From Ylistrum balloti (Eukaryota), in NCBI RefSeq assembly GCF_031769215.1, contig NW_026781866.1:186001-250000 (forward strand): a stretch of 64,000 bases of DNA. The letters run 5' to 3'. Below the pieces are notes generated by a model. That model was given only the letters and a program-made list of their open reading frames with translations. It searched no databases and had not been told where the DNA came from. The translations under genes were made by a program, and so were the position numbers. This document shows positions 1-10,972 of the stretch, piece after piece. Position 1 is the stretch's first letter. Every line of letters begins with the position of its first letter.

Positions 1-36
1 AATGTAAATTGCCACGAATGTATAAGTTTGATTACT

Positions 37-42
37 TTTATT
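37..42 (-). terminator. Polyadenylation signal AATAAA of the small secreted-protein gene
   Basis: TTTATT on + strand, about 55 nt downstream (minus sense) of the TGA at 97-99. Confidence 0.7.
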
Positions 43-96
43 GTTGATCATCTTGTACATGAACTGTACCTTTGGAAGGAAAATGAAAAGATTGAA

Positions 97-341
97 TCAG
101 CCATCATATCCACAGTAGTCATCTCCCATCCATCCTCCGCAACCCCAGCCTCCGTATGACATGGGCATATTGTAACCATAGCTGTACCCTCCAGGGCCTC
201 CCCATCCTCCCATGTTTCCGTATCCGCTGGCCATACCTGGCATCCAATATGAATTCATGCCACCGAATCTACCGGGGAAATAGCCACCATCGTCAGATCC
301 CCATCCGTCGTCACCCCAGCCTCCATACCAGGGGTAACTTG
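97..341 (-). CDS. Exon 2 (terminal) of a small secreted Gly/Tyr/Trp/Met-rich protein
   Basis: Minus strand reads tttctgtatatttgaacag|CA AGT TAC..., open to TGA: (A)SYPWYGGWGDDGWGSDDGGYFPGRFGGMNSYWMPGMASGYGNMGGWGGPGGYSYGYNMPMSYGGWGCGGWMGDDYCGYDG*. The phase-1 acceptor matches exon 1. Confidence 0.9.
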
Positions 342-899
342 CTGTTCAAATATACAGAAAAATGTTACATTGAATTATATAACCAGTTGGTATTATAATA
401 TAGATATCGGCTTCACATGTAGGTGTTTTCCCTTTACATTCGACTGCTTGTAATTTAGTATTGAACTGTTGTGATTGTGATAATTATGGTGGCCTTAAAT
501 GACAGCCTCCCAGTTATGCTTGGACTTTGGCCTGACGATGTTCAAAATTATGGCATTGTAATGGTAACCAGGTGTATGTCATTTGTTGTACTTACTAGTT
601 CATTTGTTTGTATCGTTTCATAGCCAGTTAAATGTAAATACAGATAAATGGACATAGTTATTTACTCAAAAGATTAAAAATGCATTCGCAAACGATTTTT
701 TGTTCATTACATGTTGTTCAGCCAGATAGAATACATTTCATAAGGTTATTGTTGCTGGTGAAGATCTTGTAATGATATTGATTAATACGTTTGGTTGGAA
801 ATCATATTAAAAGCATTTTCGCAATACAACTTTTTGAATTTACTTAAAAGACGTATGTGTTTATATACTAATGTTAGTAATAACATCATAAAGGCTCAC

Positions 900-957
900 C
901 TGATACAACGGTCAAGCAGAAGACCAGAACAGCACAACAAACACTTAATTTTCCCAT
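900..957 (-). CDS. Exon 1 (signal peptide) of the small secreted protein
   Basis: gccatcATG GGA...GTA TCA G|gtgag gives MGKLSVCCAVLVFCLTVVS plus G|CA (Ala). It has a hydrophobic core and a V-S-A cleavage motif. Spliced CDS is 58+245=303 nt = 100 aa + stop. Confidence 0.9.
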
Positions 958-1012
958 GATGGCAATGACGGATTCGGTGACTCTCGGCAGGTGTTTGTTG
1001 GCCGATCACAGC

Positions 1013-1020
1013 TATTTATA
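1013..1020 (-). promoter_or_regulatory. TATA box (TATAAATA) of the small secreted-protein gene
   Basis: tatttata on + strand, about 55 nt upstream of the ATG at 957. Confidence 0.75.
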
Positions 1021-1728
1021 TAGGCCTCGTGGTCCTTAACCTTTTCAGGTATTCAGCGTGCACATGAACAAAATTTAATTATCTAAATGATTATAAAACA
1101 TCATTACCGACAAATTACTTGTAACCACATTTGACATGTTGCTGGTGATTAATGTTACATTCAAGCAGCGATGAATACCTAATTGATAATACGACGTTAT
1201 TTATATACGGAAGTACAAACATGTATATCTACAAACTTTAAAGTACGAATGCTGACATTATGACATGAGTTTATGTCTATATAGATGAAGTACTTTTCCT
1301 TGATACTATATTAGCTATAAATGTCGTTTAAATCATTTTGTTTTGTTATCCATCTTCTTACCATATACATATATATATATATTTACATGTATGTTGTACA
1401 AGAAGCATTGTTTTATTGTTGTTACAAAACGAATTAAATAAATGTGGTAATTCATATGTTGTTGTTTTATGGAGCGTAATAAGATTAATAACATTATGCA
1501 CCATGACAAACTTTGTCAATTAGGCCAAATAAAATAAATCATGAATATAAACAAGATTCGTACACAAAAAATGTTTGTCAAAACTCAAAAACTGATTGTC
1601 AGTGAGACATCTCCACAACACATACATATACTCAAGGGATAAAGAAACGCAATATAACATTATTTGCAATATCTTGCGAACGTGTTGTTCAAAAACAATG
1701 AAAATTGGTCAAGCAACTCTCTAGACTA

Positions 1729-2490
1729 CAGTTCACGCGGTTTTGTATCTAATGTTGCATTATTGTATTACGTGAAAATGTCTTCGAGGAAAGCACGAAA
1801 CGGGAAAATCTCGTGCACAGCAGTGTTATGACATTGAGTTACACTGCTAGTCATACAATTAGGTAGTCTTCATAGAGACACATTATTTTCCGATATTTTG
1901 ATTAATTTTAACATTAAACAATGGTATGGCTGACGGGAGTTCAGAGGGGTCAGGCCAAGGTGATGATTATGCAAGGTCAAAGGGAAATATAGGTTGCCGG
2001 ACATTTCAGTGTCCATATTTGCACTACAGAACGTCTTGTTAGCGTCTAAGGGAAACTTGGCAGGTTGCTGATAGACCTAGGTCTTGGCGTCCACGCGTGA
2101 CGTTACAACATTAGGACAGGTCTATTCGTCCCGCCCATTTCCGCAATCGGCACCTTACTGCCACTGAATCTGCTCTTCATACAACATGTACTAATAACAG
2201 TCATATCCATGCAAAAACTACCGAAACGATTGTAGGAAGTTGGTCTGAGGGCACGTCACCCGTTTTAAGATCTGCCCCTTACCGCCGTATGGTTTAAGAG
2301 GCGGCACATGCCTCCAAAATTATTCCCAATGAGGCAGTGGACGCGGGTCATGTTTACTGATGAGTCCCGGTTAACTCTGTTTTGAGCAAACGGTCGACGT
2401 CGTATATACCGGCTTCGTGCAGAACGTTTTACCGACTACTGCTTAGTAGAGACGGATAGGTTTGGGGGTGGATCGGTTATGGTGTGGGGC
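1729..2490 (+). mobile_element. Tc1/mariner transposon remnant (disrupted transposase, 3' truncated)
   Basis: From ~1921, manual translation gives an HTH-like start (..QRGQA..MQGQ....VA.HF.VH), ADRPRS.RPRVT, RVMFTDESR and ETDRFGGGSVMVWG, with stops and frameshifts. A possible TA|CAGT left end lies at 1727-1732. Confidence 0.85.
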
Positions 2491-5400
2491 TTTAGCCTCG
2501 TATAAAAACAAGTCAGCCAACACAGGGGCACAGTCAATTCCCAAAGGTATGGCAATTGTCTGTGGGAAGATCTTACTACCAAACTCGATGAAGAAAATCG
2601 ACTATTTTTTTATGCTATCGTCCGCCGTATATGTCTTCTTTGATTTGGACGAAATGCATTTTTGTATATTTCAAGACAATATATTTGTACTGACGTTAAC
2701 ATTTCTTTGAAAAGAATGCTCTCATAACAAGAGAACAACGACGTTCTGTTTAGAAAGGAGTATAGTGTTGTACAGAACGGAAAATCAAAAGTTCTTATAA
2801 AAGAAAAGTTTGTTTTGGAGAGGGTTCTGTAATTCTACATATTATCAATTCCGCTTCTCGAGTAAACAATATCACGATAAGACTGTAACCCAGATATGAT
2901 AATGATAAGAGAGATGACTAAGAGTTTTGACTACGATTTGGTTGAACAGCTAGACGAGCAAGCAATAACACGTTTTTATATGGATTCTTGTAAAATTTTA
3001 GAATTCAATAAGATAGAGAAGTTCATCTCCTTAGCATTAATAAAATAAATCATTGTAATTCAGCCTAAATGTTTGAGTCTGACACTCCCAAAGGCCGATA
3101 TGGTTTTAAATTATACACTTGTGTAGGAATCGATTTTGTATAAATGGTCGAATTCGACTCCTAGGGGTGGGAAGGAGGCAGGAAGAGAATAGAACAAATT
3201 CTCCAAAATCCTTCTTCTTAATAGAAATGATTTTAACAGTATATTTAGCCTATCTTTAGAACACAAGTAAATGATTTTTGTCCGCATTCGTTTCTTATCA
3301 GTCTGTATGTCTACGGTATACCGCATTCACTAATAACCTATCCAGCTAGTCGTACATCATCCCGATTTCCTTTAACATTATTTAGGTGTATATCTACTGA
3401 CGGTGAGTAGTTTTGACCTTTTAAAAGGTACGTGACTATTATATTATTTGTAACTAATAGCATAGACCTGACGGTTGGATTAGCATGGGTCACATAACAA
3501 ACGCAATCCTAGCAATTATACACAATATATAACATTACTTGATATGCAAAAGGACATTAAGGTGTTATGGTTGAGGAGAATGAACAATAACATTAGTGAT
3601 ATCTTTTATGAATCTAGATTAACAACAAAATATGATCGGGAGAAAGCTTTTTAGGGAGACTCCTGAAAAAGTAACCTCTACGGCCAGGTGTGATCTAAAG
3701 CAACACAAGTTTTGCTTCTACGACAGTAAGGTTCAACGATACCTTACACACCTCACGCAAGTTTGTGGCATGTTCTCTCTGTTTTGACATAATACAGTAC
3801 CGCCAAAACTTTTGTACGAATGTTATTTTTTGAAGGCGATGTCTTATATGAAAATTATCTTATCATTTCTTATTACTACTCATCATTTCATAATATGAAA
3901 AATCTTTAATGTGGAATTTAGGACATTGTTCAATTTTAACAGTCGTAAATACTGTTGTTATCGCGTTTGTAGAAATATTGTTTGAAGTTCAATCACCATG
4001 CAGTAATCAATACTTCTCTTATCAAAAATTTATCGAAACCAGAGTAATATCTGACAGGACCAATATCAGAAGTGTTTAACATTAATTTTTACAGTATCCT
4101 ATAACCCATACGTTAATAACTGCTCAAATGCGTTGGAGATTCCCGGTTCATCCAGTCATGTGCAACGGGCTTCTGACACCTTCCTAGTCAGATATTGCGA
4201 GTGGGGTTAGTATCAGGTGTGGTTTTACTGCTGTATATCTTGCAGTCTATTCAATGCGAAAACAATCGTTTGTTCTTTTGTTAATAAACATAGATATTTT
4301 GGAACTTACAAGTAATTCTGTCTTTTATTAACACCTGATAAAAGCAGAAAACATAGTTTTTGTGATTTCTGCTAAATATTTATAAGATTTTATGACTATT
4401 AATGTCTGCCTACGATATTTTTTTTTTTAATTTCATAAGTATGGAATTTATTTAGTTGCTTAACGTTTTACCAGCGGCTATGTGTATAATCATTTAACGA
4501 CAATCTCCGCCCTATGTATCGTTGTGGTGGTGTTGATTACGTGGATCAAAATATGATCGTGTCATTTTCCGATGTCTCGGCTATGATGTATTGTTAAAAT
4601 GTATGTGTTTGTGAACATATGACCTGGATATGCGATATACAGAAAATGATTATAAAGCAGGGGCCCAATTGCCATTCATCCGTCACTTGGCATTCATTGC
4701 TTTTCCCTAAAACATCCCGCTACCATTCATATTCAAACTGCGTCAATATCTAATTTATTTCAATTCAGCATTGAATCTTTCTTTTTATCGATTTCATGAG
4801 GTGGTGCATGGAGTTAATATACAGATAAATTTAATGAACTGCGAAACAGTTCATGATGGATTTATCTCAGGAACAACTCGCTTCATCACCATATGAAATC
4901 GACAAAAGCAAAATTTCATGTTTATATTTCAATTAAGACGGTTTGTATTCAATATTTGGAACAAATCCAAAGTCTGCAGTCTCTAGAACTTGTGCAAGTC
5001 TAATGGATTACGTTAAAAATATAGTCCAATATATAAATCAGATGATGAAACAGTGCTACTCCATATTACGATTATGCGACACACTAAGGTTTTAGCAAAG
5101 TTTACCCCTTCGATCTTGAATATTGGTCAGGGTAATATCTTTTTGAAAACGTTAGCAGGATACCTTTAAGGAACCACCAAGTCGACTGTTTGACGTTTGG
5201 TCATTTGTTTGTAGCGAAGTTTTTTAAAGTTGATAACGGACTGACGACGGAACGTCAATAACAGTACACCTAGCATCAGCAGGACAATTCGTTTAGCCAC
5301 CACTTCTTTCTGATCTAAATCATATTACGGAAGAGAAATATTGATAATTACGTGCCAGCTGAAATGCTAATACCTACTAACTCTAGGGCGGAATACTTGT

Positions 5401-5943
5401 GAATAAGAAGAAAGCTGTTAAGAGAAATATTGATAATTACGTGCCAGCTGAAATGCTTATACCCACTAACTCTAGTTAATAACAATAAATCTTATTCATT
5501 TATTGCAAGACGATATCGATTTCATACATTCTGCTATTGCTTAATATTTTCCATTACAATTATTCACAAAGTTTTACATCGTGATAAATTTTATTCCTTG
5601 CTACCTATCACACACTAGCATTCAAAATTAGGATCATAGCACTGTGTTCAAATAATTGTATAGTCTATGTCTTGTATTGTGTTACAATCTGTATTACTAA
5701 AATGTACAATGATGTTGTATAAAAATATGAAAAGAACCTGACACCCGGCTAACCACCTGTATCTGTGGTAACATCTATGATATGAAGAATACTCCGACAC
5801 TCCGAGTGAACACGCCTTCCTCAGACAGCGCCTCGCTTCACTTGATGCGCATAATACAAGGTTTCTTCACAAACAAACATTCAGATACCGAAAAGGTAAA
5901 CAACAACTGGCCGACTCTACCAGTTGTAGGTTTTAATACAGAG

Positions 5944-5966
5944 ATGGCGGTATCTCGTTACTTAAG
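5944..5966 (+). CDS. Fucosyltransferase copy 1, first coding micro-exon (MAVSRYL-R)
   Basis: ATG GCG GTA TCT CGT TAC TTA AG|gtaagg has a strong donor. Phase 2 matches the acceptor at 11354|11355. Confidence 0.75.
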
Positions 5967-7899
5967 GTAAGGCTTGCTTTTTTTTAAAATATGGCAATAT
6001 ATATCGGAGACGGATAATATATTCTAAGCAATAATGACAACCATTTAGGAGTTCTTGGGTCTAGAAACTTTATGTATTGATCTGACAGTATTTCATCATT
6101 AAGGTCGACAACCCAACAGTACATTTCCAGTTTTTGTTGCAATCTAAATAAATATGACACTCGTCCAAGGATGTAGTATCAAAGGACTTTCACGGAAAAT
6201 GACAGCCTCTTGGCTAATTAACTAGGATTAGTACATGAATGAAACTTGATATTGATTGTAATTAAATATTTCCAACGAGATTGATCTAATGTCATAAAGG
6301 ACGCATCACGTCCTGTTAAAATCCTGTTTAGAAAATTTGTTACATGAAGTGATGGAATCAGATTTCAGGTGTAGGTTTTAAAGGATGTAGTGACCACCAG
6401 CAAGTTAAAAGGGTGGTGTACTGGCAGGTTAGACATCATAACAGCAGATTCCTCTGTGTGTCTGATCAATTATCAACAGTCACTGTGTCCACCAATCTGC
6501 ATTTATACACGTTCTATATATTATCCATTACTCATGAACGAAATGATTGTCGTAACATACTTTCCTGAAAACAAACTTCACATGTATAAATACGTACAAG
6601 TGGTGACGTTTTAATGCTAATGAAAGAATCAATCATTGATTTGGTTTTAATGATCTTACTGATATGACATTTCCTCATTATCGATTATTGCTGTCGACGT
6701 TTTACAAACTGTCTTTACTCAAATCAATGTGCATATGTGCACGTTATATTAATTACCCATTCCTTTCATGAAAAAAATAGTAACATATTTACCTGTAAAC
6801 TTACACGACGTCACATGTTCATAGAGCTAATGACGTTCATTTATTTTGAATAATCGCAATGAAGTTAAGTTTTTCATTATCCAATATAATTGACCTCGTT
6901 TATTAACTGTCACTGTCTATATCAACGTGCATTTGTACACGTTCTATACATTACACAAAAAATAACAGTATTTGTCATTGATTTATTTTTAGTAATTTCA
7001 ATGATATGGCATTTTTCCTATCGACTATTGCTTTCATTATTTTCCGTAATCTTTGATACATGGGCAGCTACGTTTCGGATGTGTATATATGTAAGATGGT
7101 GCTTGTATATAGTGCATGCTGATGTTTTTGGACAACTGATGATGTGTTTATCTTGAATGTAGCTAGTAGTAAATAAATGTGTGCATTCGCTACCGGCACT
7201 TGTGTAGCCGAGTGCAATAGTTTTTGAAGGGTGAGTGCATTATATGGGATTTGTTTGTGTATGGTGTATGGTGGATTCTATTTGTGTTTGGGATTTAATT
7301 TAACAATACAGTTTGTAGTTTATAAACATGGTTGTATGTTGTGTAAATAGCAGGCCAAATTTACTAGCATTTCCCATCAAAAGCAAATTATTCCCCTGGG
7401 TTATATAAAATTTTCAATATCAGTTTGAAAATTTTGTTTCATTTCATGTTTTTGTAACATGGTGACTCATGACACTTCCTAAGTATATTGGTAAAGTAAT
7501 TGTACTACTAAACCCTGTCTACTTCCTAACTTAGTACTTTCAACACGTGGACCTCGTCTCTTGCAAACTGATTATGTTTGGACGCGAAAATATGCTTAGT
7601 ATGCATATCGTATTACATAAGGCTTGTTAGATTTACTTATTGTATCAGCAACCAGTTTATTTGTGGTTTATAAAATCAATGCAATTCCTATCATGGTATT
7701 TCTTTATATCCTTATAAAAGATAAACCTCCTTTAAACTTGTGTAATGTAAATAAGTCGGATGAATATTCTGATACTCTACATGCAAATTCTATTTTAAAG
7801 AATACTTTATCCTTTGTCATAGCTACTCCATCTATCGTTCTGGGCCGTACCCAAACTTGAACTTTGTAAGTGTTATTGGCAGTTGGTCGACTGGTATGG

Positions 7900-10800
7900 C
7901 TATTGTATATCTAATAACTTTTCAACATTCCGAGTCCTGGTAGTTTATCCGTTTCTAATTTAGAAGCAATTCTTAACCAAGTCTTTTTATCAATATTGCA
8001 ATACAATGTTCATAGCTTATTCCCTTAAATGGTCTTAAGTTTAAGTGAACTACAATATCAACTATCAAAATGATATTTTATCATTTACTGAAACTTGGTT
8101 ATCACCTATTACAGAAAAGTCAGGCAAACATTTTCTTTCTAAATTTCATGGCCAATTTGTAAAAAAAATCTCGGTCAGATAGGATTGATGGGGGTATTAC
8201 CGTGTATATTAATAAAAATATTACTACCATCCGCCGTTCGGAATTTGAAATAAATAATCTGGAATGCCTTTGGGTAGAACTGCGGCTTCACAATACCATT
8301 ATTATGTTAGGTACGTTTTATAGACCTCCAAACTCTGGAATTTTGCATTTAATTGATCTTTCTGTCGACGTGGTTGCTAAACCATAAATCGGATAGTATA
8401 TTGATAACTGGTGACTTCAATGAAAATCAATTAGCTACTAACTCTCATCATATTATTGATTTAATGAATCCATATAATTTTATTCAATTTTTTTTTGTTG
8501 ACGAACCCACTCATTTTACAGAGAACTCCTCGCGTTTTAGATATATTTATGACAAATAAGATAAGGGTTATTAAGGAAGTTGTTGTGGGGGAATCTTTTT
8601 TTACCTGCTGAGACTAGATATTACTGTCCTATTTATATATTATTAGATGCTGGTGGTAATATTTTTAATATGAGTATTCAAAGGCATATATGGTTATATA
8701 CAAACGGTGACTATAACATTTTTATGGTATATTGAATATTGACTGGATTAGTCCATTTAAAAATTTACCAATTGATGAAATTGATTTTTTTTTTAATTCC
8801 ACAAATTTAAACACTGCTAAAATATAAATTCCTAATAAAACCATAATATAAGGAATACTGAACGACTACAGATGCATATTGAGGCGAGAAAATTAATAAT
8901 AGATCGACAAAATTACATTGAAAATTTAGACGGGCAAGAAATAAATGCATTGTTGCCATTTGAAAAGCAAAAACGAATATATCCTTAAGTTAACTGGTAA
9001 GATAAAATTAATGTCTCCATCGACACAAGACTGATTGAAGATGATTAATACTTTTACAAATGTTTCAAACAAAACATCTCATACTATGGTGATAAAATAA
9101 ACAAAACGCAGATCTTTTCAATAATTATTTTATTTGTCAGTCTACTATCGACGACTTTAATGTAACACTTCCACCTAATGTAACTACTCTCAATAATAAA
9201 CTCGAAAATATTTATGTTGCTGAACCAGTTGTTGAAGATACAATAAATATGTTGGATATATCTAAAGTTTCAGGTTCAGATAATTTGAGTCCAAGAATTA
9301 TTAAGGAATCAAAGACATGGTATGTTATTTCAATCCTTTCTAAATTGTTAATTAAATCTATTGACTGTGGTATATATTCTACAATATGGAAAGTCGCTAA
9401 TGTTACCCCATTTAATTTCAGTAATAATTACCATAACTGCAGTATGAAAATTATGTTACCTACACCAATCTTTGTATCCCAAAAACAAAAGATTCAGAAT
9501 CCCTGCCTTTTCTACGATCTATGAGCCATCACGGCAGAAATATAGAGTGATCTCCCTTCCTCTTTTCTTTATTGCTGCCGACGAGTGTGGACGGTTCTAA
9601 GCTGAGTGCTTTCACTTCCTTCTCGTTGTACTTCCATTTATTATTTGAGTATTATTGCTACTCATTTAGAAGTGTTTAACCCATCTCCCAATCTATTTTG
9701 TCGTTTTAAGACTTGTCAAGCCCCCCCCCCTTCCCCCTGCCTGTCGGCGAAATTCCAACCGGAAGAGGGGTTCTTCATCTTCTTCCGGTAGGCCTTGTAG
9801 GTCCTCGGCCTCCGGTTCTGCCGGGAATGCTCTCGTTCCTCCGAGCTAATCCCTCGAGCAGGGGAGAGCAGTCTGACCCTGACTCGGCGCAGTCCAGGGT
9901 CGAATTGACCGGGAGCTTCCGTTTGCCGGCGGTTTTACCGTCGGGTAGGGACTTCCGGCCGCCGGTCACTGATTTGTTCTTTTGGCTCTGAAGTCCTTCC
10001 GGGGGATCCTGCAGTGCAGTGATTTGTGTGGCTACAGACACTTCTATAGTTGTCGCGTATCCAAACAGACAGCGGGGCGCCAGGTCTCACGTCCTGTGTG
10101 CTCTCGTCATCCGCATTTTTCTTCTCTGCCAGGAGATGCAGTTGACCATCGCGGTCAAGCACCTTCCTGGCAGGCTGAACGTGTTGTCGTACTGGGACGG
10201 GATGTATGCATATGCATCCCCACTCCTTCAACCTGGTGGGCAGGGTGCTACAGAAGTTCACTGCATCACTGCTTCCTACATCTGAAAGCCCATCTGTGTC
10301 CGAGGCAACCTTGATAGCTTTTGATAGGGTTTGGCACACAAAAAGAAAAATTCCGGCATTTCAGGCAAATATTTTGGTGCAAAAATCATTTAACTTACAG
10401 AGGTCAAAGGGATGTTATACATGGACTTTTTCTGAGACTTAAAATATCAAAGTACGTGTAACTCAAGGTTCAACATTAAATGCTCTCTTCTTTTTAGTAT
10501 ATATTGATGTCAAACCTAATTCCAAGTATAAGGTATCCATAGGCATATTACTAGAAATTCAAATCACTTTCTGTTTATTAATTACATGCCTCAGTTTTAT
10601 GAAACATCATTTTTAAATTCTTCAGTATATTTATGAAAATCGTTACCAATCAATATTCGCGAAAATCCGTCTGACAGGAAATTTAAAGGCTTTTTACATA
10701 AAGGCAATGTAATGATTCCTCAATATTTTAATATTGGAAGTAGAAACTTTTTACATACAAGATTGAGACTCAAATGTAGTAATCTTAACAACATTTATAC
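7900..10800 (+). mobile_element. Degenerate CR1/L2-like LINE (APE + RT fragments) in the FucT intron, interrupted at ~9440-10283
   Basis: APE motifs SILQYNV, ECLWVEL..LGTFYRPPNS, ILITGDFN and EPTHFTE. RT motifs LDISK.SGSDNLSPRIIKE and WKVANVTP, then AFDRVWH after the DIRS piece. Confidence 0.85.
9520..10283 (+). mobile_element. Internally deleted DIRS-like retrotransposon remnant
   Basis: ORF 10019-10285 has a DIRS-type RNase H (VATDTSIVVAY.NRQ.GARSHVLCALV....VKHLPGRLNVL) followed by WDGMYAYA.P..LVGRVLQK. The block is GC-rich against its flanks. Confidence 0.8.
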
Positions 10801-10928
10801 TTAAAGAATCTGGAGGAAAGTCCATTATGTTCATGCGTGTTAAATATGTTCATGCGGGTTAGTAGAAAGTATCCACTATTTTTTATTGTCTTTTGTTTCC
10901 CAAAACACTTTGCGCAGATGTCTTTTTG

Positions 10929-10972
10929 GTGTGTGTGTGTGGGTGTGCGTGCGTGTGTTCGTACATGCGTTC

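What the first reader, a model, noticed from the sequence alone, without database searches (positions are those of the whole stretch)
37..1020. Complete hidden gene for a small secreted Gly/Tyr/Trp/Met-rich protein
The ORF track misses this gene, yet every part is present in order on the minus strand: TATA, Kozak ATG, signal-peptide exon, GT-AG phase-1 intron (342-899), mature-peptide exon, stop and AATAAA. The 80-aa mature peptide has by my count 28 Gly, 11 Tyr, 7 Trp, 7 Met, 7 Asp and 2 Cys. It has no Leu/Ile/Val/Lys/Glu and repeats GGW four times. This aromatic-plus-glycine composition resembles molluscan structural and adhesive proteins (shematrin-type shell proteins, Mfp-3-type foot proteins), but I do not recognise the sequence as any of them. 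It may be a lineage-specific matrix or coacervate-forming protein (inference).
Basis: partly seen in the sequence, partly recalled or inferred. Interest (0 to 1): 0.75.

Follow-up and report, generated by a model that had tools for sequence, protein, structure and literature searches.

The report
Scallop secreted Gly/Tyr/Trp/Met-rich protein gene
This is a real two-exon saucer-scallop gene for a small, acidic, secreted, disordered protein rich in glycine, tyrosine, tryptophan and methionine; public annotation already lists it under a misleading "keratin-associated" name, only one other scallop shares it, and its role (probably a shell, periostracum or hinge matrix component) is untested.

Summary
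On the minus strand lie a TATA box (1020-1013), an ATG in good context (957), a 58-nt signal-peptide exon, a GT-AG phase-1 intron (899-342), an exon for an 80/81-aa mature peptide (341-100), a stop (99-97) and AATAAA (42-37). All composition counts are correct.

The gene is not hidden.

Pecten maximus has a syntenic orthologue. It shares the signal-peptide exon, intron position and phase, and a strongly conserved promoter. The N- and C-terminal thirds are under purifying selection (dN/dS about 0.11). The middle keeps only its composition.

Two word searches and one exhaustive HMMER search of 1.84 billion representatives found no other relative. Pfam and the PDB gave nothing. AlphaFold2 predicts disorder.

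No RNA run was available, so the junction is not shown by reads and the tissue is unknown. Function is inferred only: most likely an extracellular matrix component of shell, periostracum or hinge. The KRTAP name reflects composition, not homology.

This is a new member of a known kind (small mollusc low-complexity secreted proteins) and of modest interest. The scan has noted other, apparently unrelated Gly/Tyr-rich gene arrays elsewhere in this genome.

The parts
1188..1213 (-). Distal conserved upstream block containing a second TATA-like element (TTCCGTATATAAATAACGTCGTATT)
   Evidence: Nearly identical between Ylistrum and Pecten in the promoter alignment (columns 46-71). Its function was not tested.
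1076..1139 (-). Conserved cis-regulatory block. It includes AGATAA (GATA-like) and TAATTA (homeodomain-like) strings.
   Evidence: More than 90% identical to Pecten over about 64 nt, although synonymous sites are saturated. The motif names come from my own knowledge and were not tested.
1013..1071 (-). Proximal promoter with the TATA box TATAAATA at 1020-1013
   Evidence: AAAAGGTTA(A/C)GGACCA...TATAAATA is conserved in Pecten. The TATA box lies 63 nt upstream of the ATG.
958..990 (-). Inferred 5' UTR (the transcription start is not mapped)
   Evidence: Inferred from the usual TATA-to-start spacing of about 30 nt. No read evidence exists.
900..957 (-). Exon 1 coding part: Met plus an 18-residue hydrophobic signal peptide and the first base of the Ala20 codon
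   Evidence: It is identical to residues 1-19 of XP_060083606.1. The Pecten counterpart MGKFTVYCAVLFMFTTVVS has the same 58-nt length and donor. Mean Kyte-Doolittle value is 2.56 and the cleavage site is VVS|A.
342..899 (-). Phase-1 GT-AG intron, 558 nt
   Evidence: The donor GTGAGC and a polypyrimidine tract plus CAG acceptor are present. The Pecten intron has the same position and phase but is 721 nt long and not alignable. It holds 13 of the 18 SNPs seen in DNA run X1.
97..341 (-). Exon 2 coding part: the mature 81-aa peptide (A+SYPWYGGW...CGYDG) and the stop TGA at 99-97
   Evidence: It is 100% identical to P0001 and 61-66% identical to Pecten. The termini have dN/dS 0.11. No SNP from run X1 falls here.
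37..96 (-). 3' UTR ending in the poly(A) signal AATAAA at 42-37
   Evidence: Pecten has AATAAA 22 nt after its stop. The cleavage site is not mapped.

Best explanation
This is a genuine, single-copy, TATA-driven two-exon gene of the saucer scallop Ylistrum balloti. It is already annotated as XP_060083606.1 under the composition-driven name 'keratin-associated protein 19-4-like'. Exon 1 encodes a 19-residue signal peptide, cleaved after VVS. Exon 2 encodes an 81-residue, 8.6-kDa, acidic protein (pI about 4.05, net charge -6) predicted to be disordered, with 35% Gly, 14% Tyr, 9% Trp, 9% Met and 9% Asp. The protein has two sequence-conserved end modules. The N-terminal module is ASYPWYGGW-DDGWGSDDGGY. 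The C-terminal module is YG-WGCGGW-GDD-CG-DG and carries the only two Cys. Between them lies a linker in which only the Gly/Met/Tyr/Pro/Asn composition is kept. Most likely (inferred, not shown) it is secreted into an extracellular material of the scallop: the shell organic framework, the periostracum or the hinge ligament. There, the Gly-spaced Tyr/Trp residues would drive self-association and polysaccharide (chitin) binding, and Tyr would offer sites for oxidative cross-linking. The Asp clusters in the ends would bind Ca2+ or calcite. The Cys pair would form a small disulfide loop or an intermolecular link. Sub-probabilities: real conserved secreted-protein gene about 0.93; structural matrix role about 0.5.
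For: Gene reality:
- The model is identical to an independent RefSeq prediction.
- The window is identical to the Y. balloti contig.
- The Pecten maximus locus is syntenic, with a 518-aa P450 gene downstream on the opposite strand in both species.
- Pecten has the same 58-nt signal exon, donor, acceptor and intron phase.
- The promoter is 82% to over 90% conserved while the intron is unalignable.
- dN/dS is 0.28 overall and 0.11 in the ends, with Fisher p = 1e-5.
- None of 18 SNPs in a second DNA data set falls in the CDS, p about 0.01.
- The composition is an outlier within the window.

Secretion and disorder:
- The N-terminus is hydrophobic, with small residues at -3 and -1.
- AlphaFold2 gives mean pLDDT 46.7: a helix only in the signal peptide, the mature part as coil, and a weak hairpin bracketing C87 and C96.

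Matrix role, by analogy from papers:
- Gly/Tyr-rich regions of KRMP-3 (101-aa precursor, 81-aa mature) and Prismalin-14 bind chitin (PMC4498902, PMC3821031).
- Periostracin has 55% Gly and 10% Tyr and is DOPA cross-linked (PMC3821031).
- Met-rich regions are common to insoluble scaffold proteins of nacre, prisms and ligament (PMC7591529).
- Scallop abductin is a small secreted Gly/Met/Phe protein with a 19-aa signal peptide (PMC9999432).
- Composition, pI and net charge are identical in the two orthologues even though the middle is only 38% identical.
Against: - No RNA run holds the sequence. Neither the splice junction nor the expressing tissue is shown.
- No shell, periostracum or ligament proteome could be searched. 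Supplements of the two Pecten shell-proteome papers were not held or gave no match.
- There is no detectable sequence homology to any characterised matrix protein.
- Trp richness is unusual for known shell matrix proteins.
- With 9% Asp it is only mildly acidic compared with classic Asp-rich shell proteins.
- It has no internal tandem repeat such as abductin or the shematrins have.
- The SNP-free stretch in run X1 also covers 150 nt of intron and the 3' UTR. It may therefore be a shared haplotype rather than constraint.
Confidence: 0.55

Rival explanations
1. It is a host-defence peptide. In this reading it is a secreted glycine/aromatic-rich antimicrobial or antifungal peptide, analogous to the nematode NLP and caenacin peptides typified by YGGWG/YGGYG motifs, and is made by haemocytes or epithelia.
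For: The Ylistrum peptide carries YGGWG twice, at mature positions 6 and 63. NLP and CNC peptides are Gly- and aromatic-rich and are typified by YGGWG/YGGYG (PMC6780910). The product is small and secreted and ends in Gly, a possible amidation donor (my own knowledge). Taxonomic restriction and a fast-evolving middle are typical of immune effectors.
Against: NLP and CNC peptides are basic (PMC6780910). This protein is acidic in both species, with net charge -6 and pI 4.05. It has no dibasic processing sites. The YGGWG motif is not conserved: Pecten has YGGWN and YGRWG. It is single-copy, whereas effector families are usually expanded. No homology to any such family was detected.
Confidence: 0.15
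2. It is a secreted protein with another, non-structural role. Examples are a pro-peptide giving an amidated signalling peptide, a mucus, egg-coat or digestive-gland secretory product, or a metal- or Ca-binding carrier.
For: The tissue of expression is unknown. The C-terminal ...DG is conserved in both species. Asp-flanked Tyr could be sulfated (my own knowledge). The strongly conserved promoter block points to tight cell-type-specific control but does not say which cell type.
Against: There are no dibasic cleavage sites to release small peptides. The bias (35% Gly plus 32% Tyr/Trp/Met) is typical of material-forming low-complexity proteins rather than ligands. The conserved parts span about 20 residues at each end rather than one short bioactive core.
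Confidence: 0.22
3. It is not a functional gene. In this reading it is a chance or decaying open frame that annotation pipelines pick up because of its composition.
For: No RNA evidence was obtainable. The Pecten RefSeq model uses a different first exon 11 kb upstream, so automated models at this locus are not fully reliable.
Against: Both exons are intact in two genera despite dS of about 0.8-1.2. The ends have dN/dS 0.11. The splice sites, TATA box and promoter are conserved. The locus is syntenic. The three indels in the CDS alignment are all in frame.
Confidence: 0.05

Closest known systems
Pecten maximus XP_033724507.1 ('keratin-associated protein 19-2-like'), the only detectable homologue
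   Same: It is the syntenic orthologue. The mature peptide is 61-66% identical, with the same N- and C-terminal modules, two Cys, composition, pI 4.05 and net charge -6. It also shares the phase-1 intron and the promoter.
   Different: The public Pecten model joins exon 2 to an exon 11 kb upstream and so lacks a signal peptide. A conserved signal-peptide exon lies 721 nt upstream of exon 2 and is unused by that model. This protein is also uncharacterised.
Mammalian high-glycine-tyrosine keratin-associated proteins (KRTAP19, KRTAP6 and relatives), the source of the RefSeq name
   Same: Small size, very high Gly and Tyr, and low complexity. A published BLAST study also linked a Pecten maximus 'KRTAP6-2-like' protein to human KRTAP19-2 at E = 2e-4 (PMC10029157).
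   Different: This protein has a signal peptide and is rich in Trp, Met and Asp. KRTAPs are intracellular hair-cortex proteins (my own knowledge). No Pfam family, KRTAP families included, matches at E up to 10. No KRTAP appears in the HMMER or word searches. The resemblance is compositional.
Pearl-oyster Gly/Tyr-rich shell matrix proteins: KRMP-3, Prismalin-14, shematrins
   Same: They are about 100-aa precursors with a signal peptide and a mature protein of about 80-105 aa holding a Gly/Tyr-rich low-complexity region. In KRMP-3 and Prismalin-14 that region binds chitin, and charged regions interact with CaCO3 (PMC4498902, PMC3821031). They are lineage-restricted.
   Different: KRMPs are basic and Lys-rich (pI 9.5-9.8), whereas this protein has no Lys and is acidic. 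Trp and Met are prominent here. No sequence homology was detected. Expression in mantle and presence in shell are not shown for this protein.
Abductin, the Gly/Met/Phe-rich rubber protein of the scallop hinge ligament
   Same: It is a scallop protein with a 19-residue signal peptide and a short secreted chain rich in Gly and Met with aromatic residues and two Cys. One FGGM string is conserved in both orthologues, compared with the abductin repeat GGFGGMGGGX (PMC9999432).
   Different: Abductin has about 58% Gly, about 1% Pro, a tandem decapeptide repeat, an Ala-rich N-terminus carrying the Cys, and Lys residues (PMC9999432). This protein has 35% Gly, 6% Pro, no tandem repeat, C-terminal Cys, abundant Tyr, Trp and Asp, and no Lys. 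No homology was detected.
Nematode NLP and caenacin Gly/aromatic-rich defence peptides (YGGWG/YGGYG)
   Same: They have a signal peptide and are Gly- and aromatic-rich. The YGGWG motif occurs twice in the Ylistrum protein (PMC6780910).
   Different: They are basic, multi-copy and infection-induced (PMC6780910). This protein is acidic and single-copy, and the motif is not conserved in Pecten.

Membership tests
High-glycine-tyrosine keratin-associated proteins (KRTAP; the RefSeq name) | Sequence match to a KRTAP family profile or to KRTAP proteins | tested here: not met
   Pfam-A gave 0 families at E up to 10 for exon 2, P0001 and P0002. The profile HMMER search of 1.84 billion representatives and two word searches returned only the two scallop proteins.
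High-glycine-tyrosine keratin-associated proteins (KRTAP; the RefSeq name) | Intracellular protein without a signal peptide, working with keratin intermediate filaments | tested here: not met
   A conserved N-terminal hydrophobic signal sequence is encoded by its own exon in both species. The keratin partnership cannot be tested here.
Abductin | [quoted passage not shown] | tested here: not met
   There is one FGGM only and no tandem repeat. Gly is 35% and Pro 6%. The Cys lie at the C-terminus and the N-terminus is not Ala-rich.
Abductin | Presence in the resilium (inner hinge ligament) | not testable with these tools
   No RNA run and no proteome were available.
Mollusc Gly/Tyr-rich shell matrix proteins (KRMP, Prismalin-14, shematrin type); a functional class, not a homology family | Signal peptide plus a Gly/Tyr-rich repetitive low-complexity region in a small secreted protein | tested here: met
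   The protein has a 19-aa signal peptide. The mature part has 35% Gly and 14% Tyr (plus 9% Trp) and is predicted to be coil.
Mollusc Gly/Tyr-rich shell matrix proteins (KRMP, Prismalin-14, shematrin type); a functional class, not a homology family | Mantle expression, physical presence in shell matrix, and chitin or CaCO3 interaction | not testable with these tools
   No RNA run was found. Shell-proteome supplements were not held or had no match. Binding needs bench work.
Mollusc Gly/Tyr-rich shell matrix proteins (KRMP, Prismalin-14, shematrin type); a functional class, not a homology family | Detectable sequence homology to a named member | tested here: not met
   Only P0001 and P0002 were retrieved. 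HMMER's composition correction may hide purely low-complexity similarity.
NLP/caenacin-type Gly/aromatic antimicrobial peptides | Basic net charge and conserved YGGWG/YGGYG repeats (PMC6780910) | tested here: not met
   Net charge is -6 and pI 4.05 in both species. YGGWG occurs twice in Ylistrum and not at all in Pecten.

The most novel reading that the evidence does not exclude
The protein is a scallop-specific component of the elastic hinge pad (resilium), or of another swimming-related extracellular material. In this reading it is an acidic Tyr/Trp/Met-rich partner or cross-linker of abductin that arose in the lineage leading to the strong swimmers Pecten and Ylistrum. Its conserved Asp/aromatic end modules would anchor the rubber to the calcified shell, and its Gly/Met linker would behave as an entropic spring or coacervate-forming segment.
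Probability: 0.1. Interest if true: 0.6.

Novelty: new member of a known kind. Interest (0 to 1): 0.3.

Why it matters
This is one more lineage-restricted, low-complexity secreted protein of the sort that builds mollusc shells, periostraca and ligaments. Three features lift it slightly above the ordinary:

- Its composition is unusual: Trp and Met alongside Gly and Tyr, acidic, with no aliphatic or basic residues apart from one Arg.
- It has a clear 'two conserved sticky ends plus composition-only linker' layout under purifying selection.
- Its promoter is more conserved than its coding sequence.

If it proved to be a shell or hinge component, it would give a compact 81-residue model. That model could be used to study how aromatic/Gly 'sticker-spacer' sequences assemble with chitin or calcite, or to study abductin cross-linking.

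Practically, the result also flags a misleading automated name (KRTAP19-4-like) and a probably wrong first exon in the Pecten RefSeq model.

Tried and rejected
- RNA evidence: the look-up of sequencing runs on exon 2 plus the 3' UTR returned a single run, and it was not RNA. Laid on the window, its contig runs colinearly through the intron, so it is genomic DNA and says nothing about splicing.
- Paralogues: tblastn of both exons against the 64-kb window and against the 20.9-kb Ylistrum and 31.6-kb Pecten loci found no second copy.
- Families and structures: Pfam gave 0 hits and PDB sequences gave 0 hits. The AlphaFold2 model is too low in confidence (pLDDT 46.7) for a fold search, so none was run.
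- Shell proteomes: supplements of PMC5854119 are not held. The one held file of PMC8382897 has no match to diagnostic strings or to the accession.
- KRTAP homology was rejected as compositional.
- I suspected that the odd N-terminus of the Pecten model is a transposase fragment. Pfam gave no hit on the 84-codon open frame around it, so this stays unverified.
- The search of earlier findings by sequence was blank.

Full report
**What is there**

- TATAAATA at 1020-1013.
- ATG at 957-955 in the context gccatcATGg.
- A 58-nt coding exon, 957-900. It encodes MGKLSVCCAVLVFCLTVVS plus the first base of the next codon.
- A GTGAGC donor at 899, and a pyrimidine-rich tract with a CAG acceptor ending at 342.
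- A second coding exon, 341-100. It completes an Ala codon and then encodes 80 residues.
- TGA at 99-97 and AATAAA at 42-37.

The composition counts are exact: 28 G, 11 Y, 7 W, 7 M, 7 D, 2 C, no L/I/V/K/E, and four GGW. The window has no N runs. The mechanical ORF list shows only a 53-aa and a 23-aa fragment. That is why a prokaryote-type ORF track misses the gene.

**More than chance**

Among 91 stop-free stretches of at least 81 codons in all six frames of the window, this one reaches 57% G+Y+W. The next highest is 21%.

**How the spliced model was handled**

I never typed or joined the two pieces, and that joined step was left out. The full-length protein entered the session only because the database returned it as P0001. 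From then on I used that stored id.

**Identity of the gene**

- The word search with exon 2 returned a 100-aa protein, 100% identical over the whole exon. NCBI names it 'keratin-associated protein 19-4-like [Ylistrum balloti]', XP_060083606.1.
- The contig that encodes it (GCA_031769215.1, JAUZWB010001099.1) is identical to window 1-10957 over all 10,957 bases.
- The window is therefore saucer-scallop DNA (Pectinidae). The gene is already in public annotation, under a name that reflects composition only.

**Orthologue and conservation**

- The second hit is Pecten maximus XP_033724507.1, 122 aa (taxonomy).
- Its locus is syntenic. In both species a 518-aa cytochrome P450 gene lies just downstream on the opposite strand.
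- The public Pecten model joins exon 2 to an exon 11.4 kb upstream and has no signal peptide.
- tblastn with the Ylistrum protein finds MGKFTVYCAVLFMFTTVVS 721 nt upstream of Pecten exon 2. It has the same 58-nt length, the same TGTATCAG|GTGAG donor and the same phase.
- The mature peptides are 61-66% identical.
- Identity is 87% in the first 23 alignment columns, 74% in the last 23 and 38% in the middle.
- Nei-Gojobori estimates give dN/dS 0.28 overall, with dS about 1.2. In the two ends dN/dS is 0.11 (pN 0.086 against pS 0.49, Fisher p = 1.2e-5). The middle is not distinguishable from neutral in sequence.
- The middle nevertheless keeps frame and composition. Both mature proteins have 33-35% Gly, 11-14% Tyr, 9-10% Trp, 9-11% Met, 8-9% Asp, pI 4.05 and net charge -6.
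- The intron does not align.
- About 130 nt upstream of and including the TATA box is 82% identical. A 64-nt block (window 1076-1139) is more than 90% identical, which is more conserved than the coding sequence.

**Within-species hint**

The only public run that holds the sequence is a DNA data set: its contig runs straight through the intron. It differs from the window at 18 positions in 1,355 bases. Thirteen are in the intron, five are upstream of the ATG and none is in the 303 coding bases, for a binomial p of about 0.01. The SNP-free stretch also covers the 3' UTR and 150 nt of intron. A shared haplotype is therefore an alternative explanation.

**What could not be shown**

No RNA run was found. 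No spliced read supports the 900/341 junction and the expressing tissue is unknown. The case for the gene model rests on comparative evidence and on the independent RefSeq model.

**Relatives**

- A profile of the two mature peptides was searched with HMMER against 1.84 billion representative proteins. It found only the two inputs at E up to 0.001.
- A second word search with the alignment found the same two among 65 candidates.
- Pfam-A gives no family at E up to 10, and PDB sequences give none.
- No second copy lies in the window or within 10 kb either side in either species.
- Among predicted proteomes, the family is so far confined to two pectinid genera.
- I could not test whether other scallops lack it or merely lack an annotation. 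No eukaryotic genome collection was available.

**Structure**

AlphaFold2 on the two-sequence alignment gives mean pLDDT 46.7. It predicts a helix only for the signal peptide and coil for the mature part (pLDDT 32-49). A weak two-strand hairpin (85-87 and 96-98) brackets Cys87 and Cys96. This is consistent with an intrinsically disordered protein carrying a small C-terminal disulfide loop, but it does not prove it. No fold search was run on so weak a model.

**How it most likely works (inference)**

The protein is small, secreted, acidic and disordered. Tyr and Trp residues are spaced by Gly, Met residues are scattered through the linker, Asp clusters sit in both conserved ends, and there is one Cys pair. 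The literature offers functional analogues, though none is a homologue:

- The Gly/Tyr-rich regions of KRMP-3 (101-aa precursor, 81-aa mature protein) and Prismalin-14 bind chitin. Their charged regions act on CaCO3 (PMC4498902, PMC3821031).
- Periostracin has 55% Gly and 10% Tyr and is DOPA cross-linked (PMC3821031).
- Met-rich regions are shared by insoluble scaffold proteins of nacre, prisms and ligament. One of them aggregates with Ca2+ (PMC7591529).
- Scallop abductin is a short secreted Gly/Met/Phe protein with a 19-residue signal peptide and GGFGGMGGGX repeats (PMC9999432).

I therefore favour, at about 0.5, a structural role in shell framework, periostracum or hinge ligament. In that role aromatic stickers would mediate self-association and polysaccharide binding, Asp would bind Ca or calcite, and Tyr and Cys would cross-link.

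The main rival is a defence peptite of the nematode NLP/caenacin type, typified by YGGWG (PMC6780910). The Ylistrum protein has that motif twice. However, the motif is not conserved in Pecten, the protein is acidic where those peptides are basic, there are no dibasic processing sites, and the gene is single-copy.

**Comparison with the name it carries**

A published BLAST survey took mollusc 'KRTAP-like' annotations, including one from Pecten maximus, as homologues of mammalian high-Gly/Tyr KRTAPs (PMC10029157). For this protein nothing beyond composition supports that. There is no KRTAP profile or protein match. It also has a signal peptide.

**Context from the scan**

Earlier notes report other Gly/Tyr-rich small secreted-protein gene arrays elsewhere in this genome (s1-268571, s1-254143, s1-254201). 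I could not compare sequences with them. They show that such genes are common in this scallop, which lowers the surprise value of this one.

**Verdict**

- The gene model is well supported by comparative evidence, but not by reads.
- 'Hidden' is wrong, because the gene is already annotated.
- 'Lineage-specific' is supported as far as protein databases reach.
- The function is inferred only.
- It is a new member of a known kind, with interest 0.3.

Noticed in passing
L002:10001-10117 and L002:20609-20666 (Pecten maximus LR736853.1): The RefSeq Pecten model XP_033724507.1 starts in an exon 11.4 kb upstream (MLRDTRLVDENTVTF...), giving a protein without a signal peptide. A conserved signal-peptide exon with the same length, donor and phase as in Ylistrum lies 721 nt upstream of exon 2 and is unused. 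This is probably a mis-joined or chimeric first exon. I suspected a transposase fragment, but Pfam gave no hit.
   Followed up: partly
window 1076-1139 and 1188-1213 (minus strand): These promoter blocks are more than 90% identical between Ylistrum and Pecten, so they are more conserved than the coding sequence. They contain AGATAA, TAATTA and a second TATATAAATA about 190 nt upstream of the main TATA box. This is a candidate cell-type-specific enhancer or alternative promoter.
   Followed up: partly
L001:12270-20861, beyond the window's first base, on the opposite strand to the gene: A 518-aa cytochrome P450 gene (PF00067) lies tail-to-tail with this gene. The same arrangement is found in Pecten maximus (L002:24192-31639).
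   Followed up: no
window 1-1355: DNA run X1 differs from the window at 18 sites, all between 493 and 1105. The first 492 bases (3' UTR, exon 2 and 150 nt of intron) are identical. The cause may be constraint or a shared haplotype block.
   Followed up: partly
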